DNA of 62,909 bases, filler included, from Sluysia triapertura (lineage: Eukaryota): assembly GCA_046118255.1 (NCBI GenBank). It is 5 parts of 5 records of this genome, joined end to end, with 100 filler letters (N's around TTAATTAATTAA, not from the genome) between each part and the next. Parts side by side here need not be neighbours in the genome. Positions count along the whole stretch, not along the records: positions 1 to 16,519 come from JBJNIA010202263.1; 4 more parts are not named here. One strand, written 5' to 3'. Below are positions 1,581 to 38,871 of the stretch, piece by piece (within the stretch, counting starts at the first letter, position 1; every line of letters starts with the position of its first letter). Position numbers and translations under genes: made by a program. The notes under the pieces are model-generated. The model saw only the letters and a program-made list of their open reading frames with translations. It made no database searches and had not been told where the DNA came from.

Positions 1581-2393
1581 TTATTTGGTAAAACGTATAT
1601 ATATCAAAAATACTGTCCCGAATAATGTGCCATTTGTTTCATACGCTCCGCTATCTAAACAAAAATAAAAAATTATAATATCATTATTACCTGTATAAAA
1701 TCTAATTACTTTTAGTTCATTGATAATGGACTTGTCCTTGCTCACGTTCAGATTTGATACTTCAAGGAATCTAAAGATTTGTCCGATTCGAGATAGATGA
1801 TCGACATTCTGTAAGCAATTGGTGTATGAAATCATTAGTTAATCCACTGTATGGGCTTAAATACAACTGTTTCCATATTTGACACAATTTCCTTCTTGGT
1901 CAGTATTAAACAGGTACATTCCTCTTTTGATGTCTTTATAAGAATTTGTATATAGCCAACGAGTTTCACATGAATTACATTGTGACACATCTGATGATAT
2001 TATATCTTTATTGTTACTATCATTAAGTTCATCTTCATTCTTTTCTATTGTTTTCAAAACCGCTTTACCCTTTGATAATGTTAAGGGATTAATTAATTCA
2101 TTTGTTTCTTCGGTCAATTTAAAATGTCTTATCAAGGTCCGAAAGAGGTGCCAATCATCGAAGGTAATGTAAAATTTATTGCACAGTTCAAATAGATCGC
2201 AAACAGCCAATATTAAACCATTTAAATTAATTTCGCGGATTTTTTCCTGATGTTTAAAAGTTTTATCAGAACGTATTACTTTGAATTGTCCCGCCATGCA
2301 AATAACGTCGTTCAAGGTAATTTCACTGAGAATAAATGATGAAAACAAATCATTAATTTTTTGAATGCATCGTTTAATACTTTTAGTAGTCAT
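1581..2393 (-). pseudogene. Disrupted gene with an Unkempt-type CCCH zinc finger
   Basis: ORFs 1857-2393 and 1581-1835 share a frame and are separated by two TAA. Read-through gives MYLFNTDQEGNCVKYGNSCI*AHTVD*L, matching the finger at 62345 and the recalled Unkempt finger TCIHETDARGHCVKNGLHCAFAH. Confidence 0.65.
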
Positions 2394-2653: not shown

Positions 2654-3022
2654 TCAGATTATATCAGTTAACATGTAAAAAGTTTCTTCGAAAGTTTTCA
2701 TACATACTAAAAGCACATGTTGTTTAATTTGTACATCAATGTTATTAATAGGAGTATCGCGTAAAGACCTCTTTAATCGTTGAAATTCTTCTACCTTTAT
2801 ATCATTAAACAAAGGTATTCCGGCATGTAAACAAGCAACAGTAGGTTCAATTATTGGTCTAATCATACCCACTTTATCAGCTCTCTTATTTCCAGTTAAT
2901 AAATTTTTATATTTTTCTTCAAAACATTCGCATTTAGGAATCTTATTAAAACAGATCCGTGAATTCATGTAAAATACAGAAATTAAGCCTCCAAGGACTA
3001 TTAACAGTGATACGACACACAC
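2654..3022 (-). CDS. Hypothetical protein or exon with hydrophobic N-terminus
   Basis: 122-codon open frame with coding-like composition in very AT-rich DNA. No recognised motif; annotated start is non-ATG. Confidence 0.3.
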   Translation of the reverse strand: MCVVSLLIVLGGLISVFYMNSRICFNKIPKCECFEEKYKNLLTGNKRADKVGMIRPIIEPTVACLHAGIPLFNDIKVEEFQRLKRSLRDTPINNIDVQIKQHVLLVCMKTFEETFYMLTDII

Positions 3023-5538: not shown

Positions 5539-6395
5539 CTGAATTTAAATTACGTGCGGTATAATTTATTTTAATAATTTTTATTTAACATTTTTTGATT
5601 ATAGATAGATTAAATTAACACATTATGAACGAATAGTCTAACTAATCTAACTAAATTTGGAAAATATGCAAAAAAAGTTAGAAATTAAAACGATGATATA
5701 AATACTCACCCTGCTGTAAGGTTGAAGGCCGCTAAGTGGGTACTAATACTCGAACTACTCATAATGTGGATATTTTTATGTTGAATTTATGGATAACAAA
5801 AACAAACGATAAATTTTTTTAATGTGAAAATTTACTTTTATATTTTCTTTTTATTTTATATAAATATTTTATACTTTTTGAATAAATACAAATATTTCAT
5901 TTGTATGAAAAATTTTAATATAAATTTAGATTACATTAATAAATTTATTCCGCAGAAGAAGATACTTTCCAAAGTTTAAAGATGGTCACTTCGATTTGAA
6001 ACGGTAATTGAAAATAAATTAACCAACCAATAAATTACTTACGATCATCTATTCGATAATGTTGCGTCATCTTTAAATCATGTAATAAATAACGATAAAT
6101 AAAATGGACAAACCAAATGTTAAAGTCTAGTTAGACATTTCTGAGAGCGTAATGACTGATAAAAAAGGTTTTATCCAAAAATGAGCTAAATTCAAAAATA
6201 AATCAAAGAAAACGAAGATATTAACAAAATGTGAAAGGTGATAAAAACGACTTCATGAATTCAGAAAGGAAGAATGATTTTCAGTTATGCAATTAAAATA
6301 AAAATATTACGTATTAAAATTAGTATAAATATTAAAAGAGGAATTTGTTTAACTTATAACAGAAATATAATTATCAAAAATAAGTATAAACATAC

Positions 6396-6544
6396 AGAAC
6401 TGCATTTGTAATATTCCCATATGTGATGCATACGACCTGCGTTTCCTTGATCATAACATATACTAGCTCGATTACACCAAAGACATGTCATACCAGGCAT
6501 ATATGTTGTTAAACAAGTTACGCAAGACGTCTTAGATTGGCAAC
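6396..6544 (-). CDS. PLXDC: PLXDC-like gene, PSI-domain exon
   Basis: SCQSKTSCVTCLTTYMPGMTCLWCNRASICYDQGNAGRMHHIWEYYKCSS has the C..C..C...CxWC...C...W...C pattern of PLXDC PSI domains. tgtag acceptor, gtatgt donor, phase 1 to 0. Confidence 0.8.
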
Positions 6545-7099
6545 CTACAATTGAAAATTATAATTTCTAATAACTGTTATAAATTATCTCATTATAGTTA
6601 TAATTGTTATAATTTCGAATGTATGTACTTTAGTAAAAATAGAAAATAATAATTATTTATTGATGAAAGTAAGTAGGTAAATTTTTATAACTGGATTATA
6701 AAATCAGACGGAATGACCACTTGATCTTTATTATTTATAATTTGGAAATGCTAAACTTATATTAGAAGTGATTTATTATTTACAAAATAAATATTTAAAT
6801 TAATATATTAATGAATTAATAAAATTAATATATTAAATTAATGATTATATTTAAATTAATATTAACATAGTTATTTATATTGTTATGTATGACTCATCGA
6901 TTATAACTTGATTATTTTGTGTCATTATACAAAACTATTGATTATTTTATTTAATCGTTTGTATAAACTAAATCATTTTTAGATTTTTAAAGTATGTTTT
7001 ATTTATTTTTAAACTCTTATAAATATTTTGTTTATTTTTAAAACCTTTATGAAAATTTTATTAATTTTAAATATTAATTTAATAAAAATTGATTCTTTA

Positions 7100-7855
7100 A
7101 ATCTGGTCAAAGTCAAGACAAAATTTATATAAATAGTACTACAATTTCAAAAATTTTAATAGCACATAACCGATTTAAATTTCACCTTTCAAGTCTATAT
7201 CAACAGATTGACATTTCAATTTCAAAAAGTTTTAAAATCAAGTTAATAAAGTTTCAATAGTCACAGAATTCATAACAGAAAAGATTATTGATCAGATTTT
7301 CAGTTTTCTTTTTATATAAGCGTTAGTTTATTTATAATAAGGCTCGATATCCTAGCGATATCTATGAGAAATACAAGTAAAATTAATTAATATTAACTTT
7401 AGATCTTTTATTAGATCTCCGTAAAATCATTTATTAAAATATCATTAAAATTAGAATTATTTTTTAATTCTAACGCAATTTATATTATTATCATTTTTAC
7501 CTATAATTTGTACAAGTTCTTTAATTTTGTTAATAAAATTTCGACAACATTTACTGGTTTTTGTATTAGATAGTTTCCATTATAAAATCTAGACGATAAA
7601 AGTACTTTTTATAGTTAGGTTTAACTCTAACTAAACAAAATATTTATTAACGATCTTTTTCATAGGATCTACGTAAAATATTAATTAAAATATTTTTTAA
7701 TTATAAAAAAACCTCCTGAATTACTAAAGGCTTTTAAAAGTAAGATCAACTAAAGAAGTTTTCTTTCTCGACCAACGTCGCAACTCCTTTTACTCTTATC
7801 TAGAAAATCCAACGGTTGGCACTAGCTGTTAAATTCAGTACGTTGGTGAACTCAC
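7100..7855 (-). repeat. Dispersed repeat family B copy (module at 7804-7855)
   Basis: Minus strand GTGAGTTCACCAACGTAC...CGTTGGATTTT. Downstream TTTACG...ATCCTATGAAAA shared with the copies at 24400 and 56697. Left boundary approximate. Confidence 0.75.
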
Positions 7856-7962
7856 TTTTCTCACAATATAATTATTGTTTAATTTTAATATATTTAATTA
7901 TAACATTTAACACACAAATAAACTTGAATTGATAATAATTTACAAGATAAAAATATAATTAC

Positions 7963-8049
7963 TTGGTAATAAAGTAAAAATATAAGCTTCTTCTAAATTT
8001 GAATAATTCAAAAAAATTGTGTCGTAAGAAGAATATAAAGTTCTATCAC
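7963..8049 (-). CDS. PLXDC: PLXDC-like gene exon
   Basis: GDRTLYSSYDTIFLNYSNLEEAYIFTLLP resembles recalled PLXDC RRTIYEYHRVEL...VEMTPLP. tttag acceptor, gtaatt donor, phase 1 to 1. Confidence 0.7.
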
Positions 8050-8611: not shown

Positions 8612-9254
8612 CTGTAATGCTAGAAATAGGTTAGTCTCAGAAATAAACTGCTAATACATTCTGACATTTAAGTCAAGAAATAAAACAAATAAAAATAAAA
8701 GCATAAATATACTCCAAGTATACATACATAATAGCTACGATCTTATTCCATTAATAATATATATTCCACCTATCAGTTGTTAAATTAATGATGTGCTACG
8801 AATATTGTTTTCATTGTTATATTGTGACTAATAAATTCTACAATTCTACATTTTATCTACAGTTACTTCTTCCCTGTGGTGCAATTCTACCGTATGATAT
8901 ATTTCTTTTTATGGCTAATGTCATACATGTCACTGGAACCTTCTAAATTTGCTAATTACATATTGTAACTTTCACTCCCTATTTCTTGCATCCTGCTTTA
9001 TTTCATTTTGTATACCTGTTCATTTATTTAATGTTAAGGTTTTTAGCAGTTTTTAATATTGCGTAATTTAATTTTATTTACGTAAAATTCTTTTTAATAT
9101 TAAAAGCTACTGTTTAATTTAGTAGCTTATTAAAATAACCTTTTTAAAATATAGCATTATAAGATTATTTTTAGAATAAACTTCGTAAACTTTTGTTACA
9201 ACGTTTTATATGTTCTTATTTGAATATCTTTATTATTAATCTAATATTTTTAGA

Positions 9255-9547
9255 ATTTAAGGTTCATTTTAGAACCTCATTAAAATCAACATTTTTCAAA
9301 TTTAGAGGTTCAATTTGTAACCTAATTAAAATCTTAATTAACTAAAATTCCTATTTAAAATATTTTGGTGCATTTTTGAAGAACCGCATTAGAATAATTA
9401 CTAAATCTTTTGATTACCTTAAAATATACGTTGATTAGAACATCCCCCATTTATTAAAGTAAACTCCACAAGCATTAAGTTTTCTCAATATCAAAAAAAT
9501 TCAACAGCTAGCCCTAACTTGTAACACTAGTACGCTGAAGAACTCAC
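9255..9547 (-). repeat. Family B-related module (9496-9547) followed by three AGGTT..AACCT hairpin repeats
   Basis: Minus strand GTGAGTTCTTCAGCGTACTAG...CTAGCTGTTGAATTTT. Hairpin units near 9259, 9306 and 9366. Confidence 0.65.
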
Positions 9548-10399
9548 CTTTAACTTTATTCGTAAAACTAGGATAAGAAAAAACCCTCTCGAATAATCAA
9601 ATTTCCTAACAGAAATAATTAAAAATCATCAATTTCCATAAAAGAAAATTATTTTCCAAAACATGAAGTACTTTTTGAAAAAAAAACTTATTTTCTAACA
9701 AAGAAATGGAAAATTATAAAACATTCTAGAATTTTCGAGAAAATTCCATGAATTCTTATTAGTATATAAACTAGCATCAGTTCATTGTATCAGCATTACT
9801 TGGTAATACAAACTTTAACTACACAAAGCAATTTTGTCAAATATTGGATTAAGCTATTAATTTAAATTATTCAAATTATTTATTAATTCTTTAACAACAG
9901 AGCCTCAGTGAATTAAACTTGTAACTATAAATAGAAATACCGATTAATTTGTAGAATTATTTATTAATGTTCAATATTATTTTTAAAAGTTGTTAATATT
10001 AATTTGAAAATGTTTTGTCAAACATTGGGTTAAGCTATTAACATAAATTATTCAGTCTATTCAAATTATTTATTAATTATTTATTTTATCACTCCATTTT
10101 ATATAGTAAATTATTATTATAATTTTTTTGATTCTCGTAGTAAAAATATTAAAATGGGTAAATCATTTTTCGTTTGTTTTCGATTTTAATGAGTGCAAAA
10201 ATTTATAATTAAAATCATAGATTTATAATTAAAGGTTTTAATTACAAAATATTTTATTTCTGTCCTATATTGTCTTAAAGTTTAATTAAGTGTTATTGAT
10301 TGAATTTCCAATTAATTTCAGATAAATTAAAATTTATATAAGATCATAACAAATTTACAGACAACAAATTGAGTTTAGAGATTAACCTGAATTATCTAA

Positions 10400-11856: not shown

Positions 11857-12040
11857 ATTATAATGCTTTATATCAATTTAAAATGAGATTTAAGAGTTAA
11901 TATAATATAGAGTTAATATAAATATAAAATTTAATAACAAATAGTAACTAGTTTTAAATTGAAATTAAACGAATTGTTATTTTAAATGAGATTCTATGAA
12001 GGCAATATAACATTAAATTTTAAAAACATAAAGATCATTG
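11857..12040. repeat. Dispersed repeat family C, copy 1
   Basis: TATAATGCTTTATATCAATTTAAAAT...AATGAGATTCTAT...CATAAAGATCATT recurs at 17674-17822. Confidence 0.7.
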
Positions 12041-27968: not shown

Positions 27969-28017
27969 AAAATCCAACGGCTGGCCCTAACTGGTAAGTC
28001 TAGTACGTTGAACTCAC
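27969..28017 (-). repeat. Family B module
   Basis: Minus strand GTGAGTTCAACGTACTAGACTTACCAGTTAGGGCCAGCCGTTGGATTTT. Confidence 0.8.
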
Positions 28018-37467: not shown

Positions 37468-38871
37468 CAACGTTGATCCAATATAATCTGTATTAAAGTT
37501 TAACTGGATTGAGTAGTGCAACCTATAAATTGTTAGGTTCATTTAACATTAACTTGATTAGGCGTAAGGTAACGTATTAATTGACAAGCTTAGTTAGCAT
37601 TCTTCTAAGCATATTAAAAATCCTAAGAGACCACCTTCGGTCAGGTATAAGCCGTCTCTATTAGGTGAACTCACTCCAGATAAGAAATATTTTGCAAAAG
37701 ATTTTTTAATATAAAAACCACATCATAAGCAAATGAAGGTTTACTAATTTGTAAAGATGTACAGAAAAGATTTTTTTATATTTTTAATTTTTATATTTTA
37801 TTGTAAAAACTTATTAAATTATTATTATTTAAAAATTTCTCATACTAATTATATAAAAATTAAAAATTATTATTATTATTATTATAAATTAAAAAAGAAT
37901 TTAAAAGAAGATTCGAGAATGGTAAATTGTTTAATTACATTTAAATTAGTTATCTTTATGTGCATATAAAAACAGACATAAAAATCAAGAAACTACAAAT
38001 AATACTACGCCATTTTGAATAATACGACTTTGTTTGGGTTTGAGTCATCTACATTTTAATTCAATCATCGCCAGTAAAATCGACAATTTAACATCCCAGC
38101 ATCTGATCATTTTCTGTGAGCTCCAGTAATTCTCAAGTTCAAAATTCATTCAACGATATCATATCCTGCGTCTACGATTAGAGGGATACATTTTTCATTC
38201 GCAAGCAATCAATTTATTTAAAAGAAAGGGCAATCTGAGAACACGAATATTCATTATTAATTAATTCGTAAGTTTGTTTTACATAGTTTGGAAACTCACA
38301 ATGAGTTAAAATCTACACGCAAAATACTAAGTTTACGGTTGGTCCTTAATACCAATCACAAAATCACTTTGAAATATAAATTCACTACTCTTTAATTGGC
38401 CCTTAAGGTCAATTATAAAATCATTATTACAAGGTAGAGTCTAACACCTAGACCTTTATTATAAAAACTTTTATTTTCACATTATGGAATACGGTTACAG
38501 ATTAATTATTATTTAATTACGAAACTCAAAACAATAAAATAATAATAAATATCTGATTGTTAACACGTCATAAGAGATTTTAACGATTTTTGACGGTGTG
38601 GGACGCTGATTCTTTGGCAATTATTATTTACTATTAGAAGGAGATATCGAATCAGCTTGTCATGTCATATAAATAAAATCATTCCAGATATAATTGAAAT
38701 CTTTTACCGTGTTTCATGATGAATTCATAAGTTTATTTATATTAAGGTTGCACTATAATTTTTATTGTTAAAATAGACTTAAATTAACAATTTTTTTTCT
38801 GACACTCAATTTTAAAATCGGAGTAAATTTTGTAGAAATCCATAATTTTAATCTTGATTATAATAGATTAT

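What the first reader, a model, noticed from the sequence alone, without database searches (positions are those of the whole stretch)
7804..7855. Dispersed module: 5' splice-site consensus followed by a covarying hairpin and GATTTT
Copies at 7804, 9496, 24400, 27969 and 56697, plus a diverged one at 37617-37674, span four contigs. Four begin with GTGAGTTC; 24400 and 56697 lack the intact GT. The stem CCAACG/CGTTGG becomes TCAGCG/TGTTGA at 9496 (one compensatory pair, two G-U) and TCAACG/CGTTGG at 27969. The wobbles pair only on the GTGAGT strand, which points to RNA. At 37617 a different stem (CCTAA..AGAGAC/GTCTCTTAGG) sits between the same flanks. Inference: a conserved leader or intron structure of an unclassified mobile element.
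Basis: partly seen in the sequence, partly recalled or inferred. Interest (0 to 1): 0.7.

Follow-up and report, generated by a model that had tools for sequence, protein, structure and literature searches.

The report
Conserved hairpin inside an LTR-like repeat
The 52-base motif is the best-conserved block of a roughly 1-kb transposable element, most likely solo long terminal repeats of a retrotransposon, present in thousands of copies in this AT-rich genome, so it is ordinary repeat biology and not a new RNA gene or intron.

Summary
The motif is real. It lies on the minus strand at 7855->7804 and 9547->9496, and its 19-base core occurs 3,585 times in the 619-Mb genome (0 in the reversed control). 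It is not a free-standing module. It sits about 35-95 nt inside one end of a non-coding repeat of about 1.0-1.1 kb. The window holds copy A at 6881-7865 and copy B, which is 3'-truncated, at about 9024-9590. Nine hand-delimited copies all have 5'-TG...CA-3' ends and a perfect 4-bp target-site duplication. They have no terminal inverted repeat beyond TGT/ACA, no ORF and no poly(A) tail. That is the signature of integrase-mediated insertion, so solo LTRs are the most likely reading. No full-length parent element was found.

The hairpin extends to 14 bp and is well conserved. Covariation is thin: one compensatory pair is shared by 12 of 61 copies. Single-copy wobbles are as frequent as A.C mismatches, which fits neutral decay. 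A second hairpin about 170 nt downstream keeps its stem with different sequences, so a multi-hairpin cis-acting domain is plausible. GTGAGT is complementary to ACTTAC inside the hairpin, and the opposite strand reads G|GTAAGT. No RNA data exist, so splice-donor use is untested. This is a new member of a known kind, of low to moderate interest.

The parts
6881..7865 (-). Copy A of the ~1-kb repeat (985 nt). It starts 5'-TGTGAGA and ends ...CATAACA-3'.
   Evidence: The genome-wide BLAST boundary is sharp at 7858. This copy has lost 23 nt of leader, so the true start is at 7865. The 3' end was set by comparison with relatives and by the duplication.
7866..7869 (-). Target-site duplication ATAT, 5' side of copy A.
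6877..6880 (-). Target-site duplication ATAT, 3' side of copy A.
7804..7855 (-). The middle and inner stems are decayed in this copy.
7651..7680 (-). Second conserved block of copy A: ATTTTACG followed by the hairpin GATCC...GATC. One arm base is mutated in this copy.
7711..7720 (-). Conserved block that reads CTGGAGG in other copies and CAGGAGG here.
9024..9590 (-). Copy B, from a different subfamily whose relatives start 5'-TGCTAGA. The 3' end is truncated near 9024, whereas relatives run to about 1.1 kb. The 5' end is approximate, within about 8 nt.
9496..9547 (-). Module in copy B: GTGAGT at 9547-9542, arms TCAGCG (9538-9533) and TGTTGA (9506-9501), middle stem CTAG/CTAG, and the T-run at 9500-9496.
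   Evidence: the predicted fold contains the full hairpin.
9556..9562 (-). Conserved GAATAAA block of the leader. It is present in copy B and deleted in copy A.

Best explanation
The module is the most conserved cis-acting block of a large, diversified family of non-coding repeats about 1.0-1.1 kb long. These repeats were inserted by a retroviral-type (DDE) integrase. They are most likely long terminal repeats of LTR retrotransposons, and nearly all assembled copies are solo LTRs. The module lies 35-95 nt from one LTR end. It forms a 14-bp interrupted stem-loop, which is the first of several hairpins in a domain of about 400 nt. I infer that this domain works as folded single-stranded nucleic acid, most probably the element's RNA read on the GTGAGT strand, during the element's own replication (packaging, reverse transcription or export). 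GTGAGT would then be either a pairing partner of ACTTAC or a U1-binding pseudo-donor, not the start of a spliced intron. Shown: repeat membership, the ends, the duplications, the copy number and the conserved pairing. Inferred: LTR origin, RNA level, strand and function.
For: Membership in a longer repeat: homology runs from a sharp 5' end for about 0.9-1.1 kb in two subfamilies. Ends: nine of nine hand-delimited copies (985-1,122 nt) have TG...CA termini and a perfect 4-bp duplication. The chance of one 4/4 match at this base composition is about 0.012. In an automated test, 13 of 30 copies had ACA plus the upstream 4-mer at the expected distance, against 3.8 of 30 for control 4-mers. There is no terminal inverted repeat beyond TGT/ACA; scores are at shuffle level. 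There is no ORF of 120 aa or more inside the element, no tRNA-like part and no Rfam family. Abundance: 3,585 core matches against 0 in the control, and a depth peak over the module. Structure: 86% of cells pair over 14 pairs, against 6-47% when the partners are slid. One compensatory pair, G-C in 40 copies and A-U in 12, favours the long-range pairing over the inner alternative. The second hairpin keeps 5-9 bp with different arms: GATCCT/AGGATC, GATTCC/GGAATC, AAATCCT/AGGATTT and ATCCC/GGGAT. Strand: there is a fixed U.G in 50 of 61 copies. Intact copies fold better on the GTGAGT strand, at -21.2 against -13.7 and -16.1 against -7.5 kcal/mol. The minimum free energy of the first 400 nt is lower on that strand in 27 of 28 copies, and that strand is purine-rich.
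Against: No full-length element was found. None of about 65 copies has a recurrent internal sequence, a primer-binding site or a polypurine tract next to either end. No second copy lies within 5 kb in 7 long loci. None of 30 integrase-bearing loci holds the module or any part of the repeat. The module alone is not more stable than dinucleotide shuffles, with z near 0. The z-scores of the two strands over 400 nt do not differ significantly, at -1.7 against -1.3 with p = 0.18. Covariation in the module rests on what is essentially one event. Conservation at one LTR end would fit U5 better, and that would make the opposite strand the sense strand.
Confidence: 0.55

Rival explanations
1. This is a self-standing non-autonomous element, not a solo LTR. 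The 1-kb unit itself is the mobile unit, integrated by an integrase supplied in trans. That integrase could come from an LTR element or from a Ginger- or Polinton-type DNA transposon. The module would be the part that this machinery recognises.
For: No copy was seen next to an internal region. Several subfamilies keep the same blocks while the spacers diverge, as happens in non-autonomous families that depend on a partner's proteins. The directional motif ATTTTACG is repeated 43 times forward and 2 times reverse.
Against: No known integrase-mobilised class lacks both LTR pairs and inverted repeats. Inverted repeats are absent here. Solo LTRs commonly outnumber intact elements, and the fragmented assembly hides paired copies.
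Confidence: 0.2
2. The conserved blocks act as DNA: they are transcription-factor sites of an LTR enhancer or promoter. GAGTTCA resembles a nuclear-receptor half-site and TTTTACG a posterior-Hox/Cdx site (both from memory). On this reading the hairpins are incidental palindromes.
For: The module is not thermodynamically exceptional. Wobbles give no strand signal. LTR U3 regions are known to carry enhancers (established knowledge).
Against: Stems are kept with changed sequences and changed loop lengths in the second hairpin, and there is a compensatory pair in the module. This is not expected of protein half-sites. The motif resemblances are recalled from memory and were not tested.
Confidence: 0.12
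3. The head of the element derives from a spliced-leader or U1-like small nuclear RNA gene, giving a retroposon with an snRNA-like 5' module: an exon-like leader, a GU donor, a stem-loop and an Sm-like AUUUUG site.
For: The order of parts matches the anatomy of spliced-leader RNAs: a leader of 33-45 nt, then GTGAGT, a hairpin, and ATTTT followed by G or A. ACTTACC(A/T)G inside the hairpin matches the 5' end of U1 snRNA over 7-9 nt (from memory).
Against: The exon-like leader varies between subfamilies while the intron-like part is constant, which is the reverse of real spliced-leader genes. Rfam gave no hit at E <= 1. The units carry 4-bp duplications and 1 kb of further sequence. The Sm-like site is loose, with ATTTG, ATTTC and ATTTTA variants. 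No free 100-nt genes or tandem arrays were seen among 30 random loci.
Confidence: 0.06
4. This is an introner or a genuine intron 5' end. On this reading the element carries a working splice donor, so that it is spliced out of host transcripts.
For: GTGAGT is nearly invariant. The opposite strand has G|GTAAGT, so a donor exists in either orientation.
Against: The donor lies 33-45 nt inside the element, and the -1 base varies. No conserved branch site, pyrimidine tract or AG was seen at a fixed distance or at the 3' end, which is ...ACA. Copies sit in microsatellites and AT-rich non-coding DNA. The two donor-like hexamers are mutually complementary and can be explained as a helix.
Confidence: 0.05

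Closest known systems
Solo LTRs of LTR retrotransposons and endogenous retroviruses (Ty3/gypsy, BEL/Pao, ERV; for example mammalian MaLR/THE1 solo LTRs)
   Same: 5'-TG...CA-3' ends with a short TGT/ACA inversion, a fixed 4-bp (sometimes 5-bp) target-site duplication, a length of about 1 kb, no coding capacity, thousands of dispersed copies, many subfamilies and nested insertions.
   Different: No paired copy, primer-binding site, polypurine tract or gag-pol neighbour was found. The U3/R/U5 borders and the transcribed strand are unknown.
Structured cis-acting RNA domains in retroviral LTRs (HERV-K RcRE and HTLV RxRE in U3-R; U5 and leader stems next to the primer-binding site). Named from established knowledge, not tested here.
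   Same: A multi-hairpin domain of a few hundred nt inside an LTR, conserved across related elements, with stems maintained by compensatory change.
   Different: There is no sequence similarity, no known binding protein and no evidence that the domain is transcribed.
Decoy or pseudo 5' splice sites in retroelement RNA (Rous sarcoma virus negative regulator of splicing; U1 binding near poly(A) signals in HIV-1). Named from established knowledge.
   Same: An invariant GTRAGT lies close downstream of a conserved AATAAA-like block, with no matching acceptor.
   Different: U1 binding is untested. The hexamer may simply be one strand of a helix formed with ACTTAC.
Cassandra TRIM elements, whose LTRs carry a 5S rRNA-like module (from memory)
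   Same: A short, highly conserved small-RNA-like module followed by a T-run, embedded in an LTR.
   Different: The module here matches no known RNA family, and the elements are not seen as LTR pairs.
Ginger1 DNA transposons (from memory: 4-bp duplications, termini TGTNR)
   Same: A 4-bp duplication and a 5'-TGTGA start.
   Different: Ginger elements have inverted repeats of tens to hundreds of bp. None is present here.
Spliced-leader RNA genes
   Same: The order of parts: leader, GU, stem-loop, U-rich site.
   Different: The leader is variable, the sequence is embedded in a 1-kb repeat with duplications, there are no tandem gene arrays, and Rfam gave no hit.

Membership tests
LTR retrotransposon LTR (solo LTR) | Termini 5'-TG...CA-3' | tested here: met
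   All nine hand-delimited copies and both subfamilies (TGTGAGA or TGCTAGA ... (T/A)ACA) show them.
LTR retrotransposon LTR (solo LTR) | Target-site duplication of fixed length, 4-6 bp | tested here: met
   Nine of nine copies have a perfect 4-bp duplication. Two further copies read by eye fit 5 bp. The automated test gave 13 of 30 against 3.8 of 30 for controls.
LTR retrotransposon LTR (solo LTR) | Some copies occur as direct pairs flanking gag-pol, with a primer-binding site after the 5' LTR and a polypurine tract before the 3' LTR | tested here: inconclusive
   None was found in about 65 copies or in 30 integrase loci.
LTR retrotransposon LTR (solo LTR) | U3-R-U5 organisation with a promoter and a poly(A) signal on one strand | not testable with these tools
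   AATAAA-like words occur on both strands of this 78% A+T sequence, and no RNA run is available.
SINE / non-LTR retroposon | Internal Pol III promoter derived from tRNA, 7SL or 5S, with a poly(A) or simple-repeat tail and duplications of variable length | tested here: not met
   ARAGORN found 0 tRNAs and Rfam gave 0 hits. The 3' end is always ...ACA and the duplication is a fixed 4 bp.
Cut-and-paste DNA transposon / MITE (including Ginger1) | Terminal inverted repeats | tested here: not met
   The head-versus-tail alignment score equals that of shuffles in 9 of 9 copies. The ATTTTACG motif runs in one direction only.
Spliced-leader RNA gene | An invariant leader exon upstream of the GU donor, in a gene of about 100 nt, often in tandem arrays | tested here: not met
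   The leader differs between subfamilies while the downstream part is constant. All 30 random loci show the 1-kb repeat context.
Spliced-leader RNA gene | An Sm site (A U4-6 G) between two stem-loops | tested here: inconclusive
   ATTTTG in subfamily A fits. Other copies read ATTTTA, ATTTG or ATTTC. No conserved hairpin directly follows.
Introner / spliceosomal intron | A donor and an acceptor that delimit the removed unit, with junctions seen in RNA | tested here: inconclusive
   A donor-like hexamer is present, but no conserved acceptor was seen. No RNA data are available.
U1 snRNA | A match to the Rfam U1 model | tested here: not met
   No Rfam family matched at E <= 1 on either strand. 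Only a 7-9-nt word, ACTTACC(T)G, resembles the U1 5' end.

The most novel reading that the evidence does not exclude
The element family may carry a captured or mimicked small-nuclear-RNA module near its end: a U1-binding pseudo-donor (GUGAGU), a U1-5'-end-like ACUUACC inside the stem-loop, and an Sm-like U-run. With this module the repeat's transcripts would engage or evade the host splicing and polyadenylation machinery. It could be a mobile U1 decoy or telescripting element, or a retroposon head derived from a spliced-leader RNA, in an animal lineage where neither has been described.
Probability: 0.1. Interest if true: 0.65.

Novelty: new member of a known kind. Interest (0 to 1): 0.3.

Why it matters
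The practical value is for annotation. One repeat superfamily with at least 3,600 copies explains many contig breaks in this 264,000-contig assembly, and it should be masked before small-RNA or intron predictions are made. Biologically, the module shows which part of an LTR-like element stays under selection while the rest diverges, so it is a candidate packaging, reverse-transcription or export signal for an unstudied retroelement lineage. If the donor-like and U1-like words really act on the splicing machinery, thousands of dispersed copies could affect host transcript processing. That is unproven.

Tried and rejected
- Rfam, both strands, E <= 1: no hit. ARAGORN: no tRNA or tmRNA.
- Primer-binding-site or tRNA-3'-end reading of GTGAGTTCACCA (TGGTGAACTCAC on the other strand): no tRNA gene with that acceptor stem. 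Pattern hits were at control level, 11 against 9, and none is tRNA-like. Rejected.
- Inner hairpin CTGG/CCAG, as an alternative to the long-range pairing: not compensated when the 5' arm changes (16 of 61 copies broken) and no better than shuffles. Rejected.
- H-type pseudoknot of GTGAGT with ACTTAC on top of the long hairpin: the 3-nt linker is too short to cross about 10 bp (geometric reasoning). These are kept only as alternative conformations.
- Terminal inverted repeats: none. Paired LTRs within 5 kb: none. Recurrent flanks: none.
- Integrase (PF00665) loci: 30 were fetched, and none holds the module or any part of the repeat.
- Metagenome scan for the 19-mer: two chance hits in GC-rich, unrelated contigs.
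- Full-text search for module words: 0 papers. A search by assembly size to name the organism gave only noise.
- Word search with the 178-aa ORF to place the organism: no hit. One Pfam hit to a KIDINS220-type SAM-like domain is the only pointer, so calling it an animal is my guess.
- RNA evidence: only one run holds the stretch. Its kind is not on record ('?'), it is kept as contigs, and no listed holder is on record as RNA. Laying it gave depth but no empty-site allele.
- RNAalifold on 500-nt and 46-nt MAFFT alignments failed because loop-length differences misalign the arms. I replaced it with per-sequence stem parsing.

Full report
OBSERVATION. On the minus strand, window 7855->7804 reads GTGAGTTCA, CCAACG, a 26-nt interior, CGTTGG, ATTTT. 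Window 9547->9496 reads the same layout with arms TCAGCG/TGTTGA. The window is 22% G+C. It belongs to a 619-Mb assembly of 263,945 contigs. A Pfam hit to a KIDINS220-type SAM-like domain at 1857-2393 (minus strand) is the only pointer to the organism, and it leads me to guess an animal. The degenerate 19-mer GTGAGTTCNNCANCGTACT occurs 3,585 times, against none for the reversed control. In a public DNA run, word depth peaks at about 11,600 over 7818-8004 against about 40-100 in neighbouring bins.

THE MODULE IS PART OF A ~1-KB REPEAT. Aligning 15 random genomic copies showed conserved blocks on both sides of the module. Upstream are a start TGTGAGA and a block GAATAAA. Downstream are CTGGAGG, then several copies of ATTTTACG each followed by a hairpin, then an A-rich variable part. 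BLAST of the window copy against the genome gave 40 scored hits, nearly all starting within about 5 nt of window 7858 and running for about 880-1,000 nt. The second window copy belongs to another subfamily. Its relatives run for about 1.0-1.1 kb, and the window copy is cut off near 9024. Comparison with relatives shows that window copy A has lost 23 nt between two AAAGTG repeats, so its true start is TGTGAGA at 7865.

ENDS AND INSERTION SIGNATURE. I delimited nine copies by hand, from two subfamilies and 985-1,122 nt long. All begin TG, end CA and are flanked by a perfect 4-bp direct repeat. Window copy A has ATAT at 7866-7869 and 6877-6880. At this base composition a random 4/4 match has probability about 0.012. 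In an automated test, 13 of 30 copies had ACA followed by the upstream 4-mer at the expected distance, against 3.8 of 30 for control 4-mers. Heads and reverse-complemented tails share nothing beyond TGT/ACA. No ORF of 120 aa or more lies in the element. It contains no tRNA-like sequence and matches no Rfam family. TG...CA ends with a fixed 4-bp duplication and no inverted repeats are, from established knowledge of transposable-element classes, the mark of retroviral-type integrase acting on LTR ends. SINE, MITE, Helitron and tyrosine-recombinase classes fail on one or more tested features (see the membership rows).

WHAT IS MISSING. I found no full-length parent. Ten exact-start copies have ten different upstream flanks. 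Clustering the flanks of about 60 copies gave no recurrent internal sequence at either end. Seven 3-5-kb downstream stretches hold no second copy. Thirty integrase-bearing loci contain neither the module nor any other part of the repeat. Solo LTRs often far outnumber intact elements, and this assembly breaks inside repeats: many 2-kb contigs end within the element. The absence is therefore weak evidence, but it keeps alive the rival that the 1-kb unit moves on its own.

STRUCTURE. On 61 distinct copies the hairpin extends to 14 pairs: 6 outer, 4 middle and 4 inner, around an apical loop CCAGC or CCGGU. Of all cells, 86% pair, against 6-47% when the partners are slid by 1-3 columns. Covariation is thin. 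One pair is G-C in 40 copies and A-U in 12, all of the CTAG...CTAG type, and there are three single-copy double changes. This one pair does discriminate: the competing inner hairpin CTGG/CCAG is not compensated. GTGAGT can also pair with ACTTAC, which lies inside the hairpin, at 93% of cells including a fixed G.U. The hexamer may therefore be a helix strand and not a splice signal. Departures from the consensus pairs are G.U 24 times and A.C 28 times. Individual wobbles therefore reflect neutral decay of dead copies, partly CpG to TpG, and say nothing about strand.

Weak strand evidence does exist at the consensus level. There is a fixed U.G in 50 of 61 copies. Intact copies fold better on the GTGAGT strand. 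The minimum free energy over the first 400 nt is lower on that strand in 27 of 28 copies, and that strand has a purine excess. However, z-scores against shuffles do not differ significantly, and the module by itself is no more stable than dinucleotide shuffles.

Independent support for a folded domain comes from the next hairpin, about 170 nt downstream. It keeps 5-9 bp with arms GATCCT/AGGATC, GATTCC/GGAATC, AAATCCT/AGGATTT or ATCCC/GGGAT, and with two loop types.

THE SPLICE-SITE QUESTION. GTGAGTTCA is nearly invariant, but three things argue against an intron. The base before it varies. It lies 33-45 nt inside the element. No conserved branch site, pyrimidine tract or AG was seen, and the element ends ...ACA. 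The ACTTACC(A/T)G stretch makes the opposite strand read (C/T)(T/A)G|GTAAGT. That is an equal or better donor consensus, and it is the complement of the U1 5' end (the consensus is from established knowledge). No RNA run is on record for this organism, so use of either donor is untested. A tRNA-primer reading of TGGTGAACTCAC was tested and rejected.

MECHANISM, WITH ODDS. That the module is a cis-element of a mobile repeat and not a gene or an intron: about 0.9. That the repeat is an LTR, mostly solo: about 0.6. That it is a self-standing integrase-mobilised unit: about 0.2. That the conserved blocks act as a folded RNA domain in the element's own replication: about 0.4-0.5, against action as DNA-level regulatory sites at about 0.15. 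The orientation of the transcript is unresolved. Composition and G.U pairs favour the GTGAGT strand. The position of the conserved part at one LTR end would fit U5, and hence the other strand.

COMPARISON AND NOVELTY. The closest known things are solo LTRs of Ty3/gypsy, BEL/Pao or ERV-type elements, structured LTR RNA elements such as RcRE and RxRE, and retroviral pseudo-donors. Spliced-leader genes, SINEs, introners and Ginger transposons each fail a defining feature. This is a new member of a known kind in an unannotated genome. The least ordinary point is the pairing of donor-like and U1-like words in a block conserved across subfamilies, which I rate as a 10% chance of something more interesting.

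Noticed in passing
window 13862-14044 (+), with neighbouring short ORFs at about 13330-14210: A frameshifted relic of a piggyBac-type transposase (Pfam DDE_Tnp_1_7, E = 2e-4, just under the cut-off) lies in the window's G+C-richer stretch (about 31-34% in the bins from 12,001 to 14,000).
   Followed up: partly
window 1857-2393 (-), 2654-3022 (-) and 14561-15046 (-): These are likely host exons. One is a KIDINS220-type SAM-like domain (E = 1.9e-13). Another is a 161-aa ORF with one weak Pfam match to the RanBP2-type zinc ribbon (E = 6.3e-5, below the cut-off). The 178-aa ORF found no relatives in the word search.
   Followed up: partly
L044, L041, L012, L007, L011, L075 and L054 (5' flanks): Many insertions sit inside (AAT)n/(ATT)n or similar microsatellites. 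This could be a target preference or simply the genome's composition.
   Followed up: no
L008 (G000:C212), cores 383 nt apart: Two copies from different subfamilies lie in the same orientation, with the second starting about 340 nt into the first. This is a nested insertion, not an LTR pair.
   Followed up: partly
G000:C61334:978-1055 and G000:C225486:1454-1526: The heads of two copies face each other within about 10-60 nt (head-to-head arrangement).
   Followed up: no
L056:128-759, L012:118-752 and L060:52-648 (reverse): Another repeat of about 650 nt lies about 740 nt upstream of the element in two loci of different subfamilies, at nearly the same offset. This may be coincidence, or both may have inserted into the same kind of host repeat.
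   Followed up: partly
Alignment A3 (61 copies), stem columns: CCAACG changing to CCAATG and CGTTGG changing to CATTGG or TGTTGG recur in independent copies. This looks like CpG decay and hints at cytosine methylation of repeats in this genome.
   Followed up: no
window 5800-6850 (-): The DNA just beyond copy A's 3' end holds other, low-copy repeats: 83-86% matches on C182682 and C10221, plus a short word at 6640-6700 found on about 10 contigs.
   Followed up: no
L002:1500-1629: One copy is interrupted right after the T-run by a G+C-rich insert with GGTTCC/GGAACC repeats, which is probably another transposable element.
   Followed up: no
L019:529-1005 (+): The flank of one copy has a 159-aa ORF with an IVxETNxY-like motif that, from memory, recalls the start of piggyBac transposase domains. 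It was not scanned.
   Followed up: no
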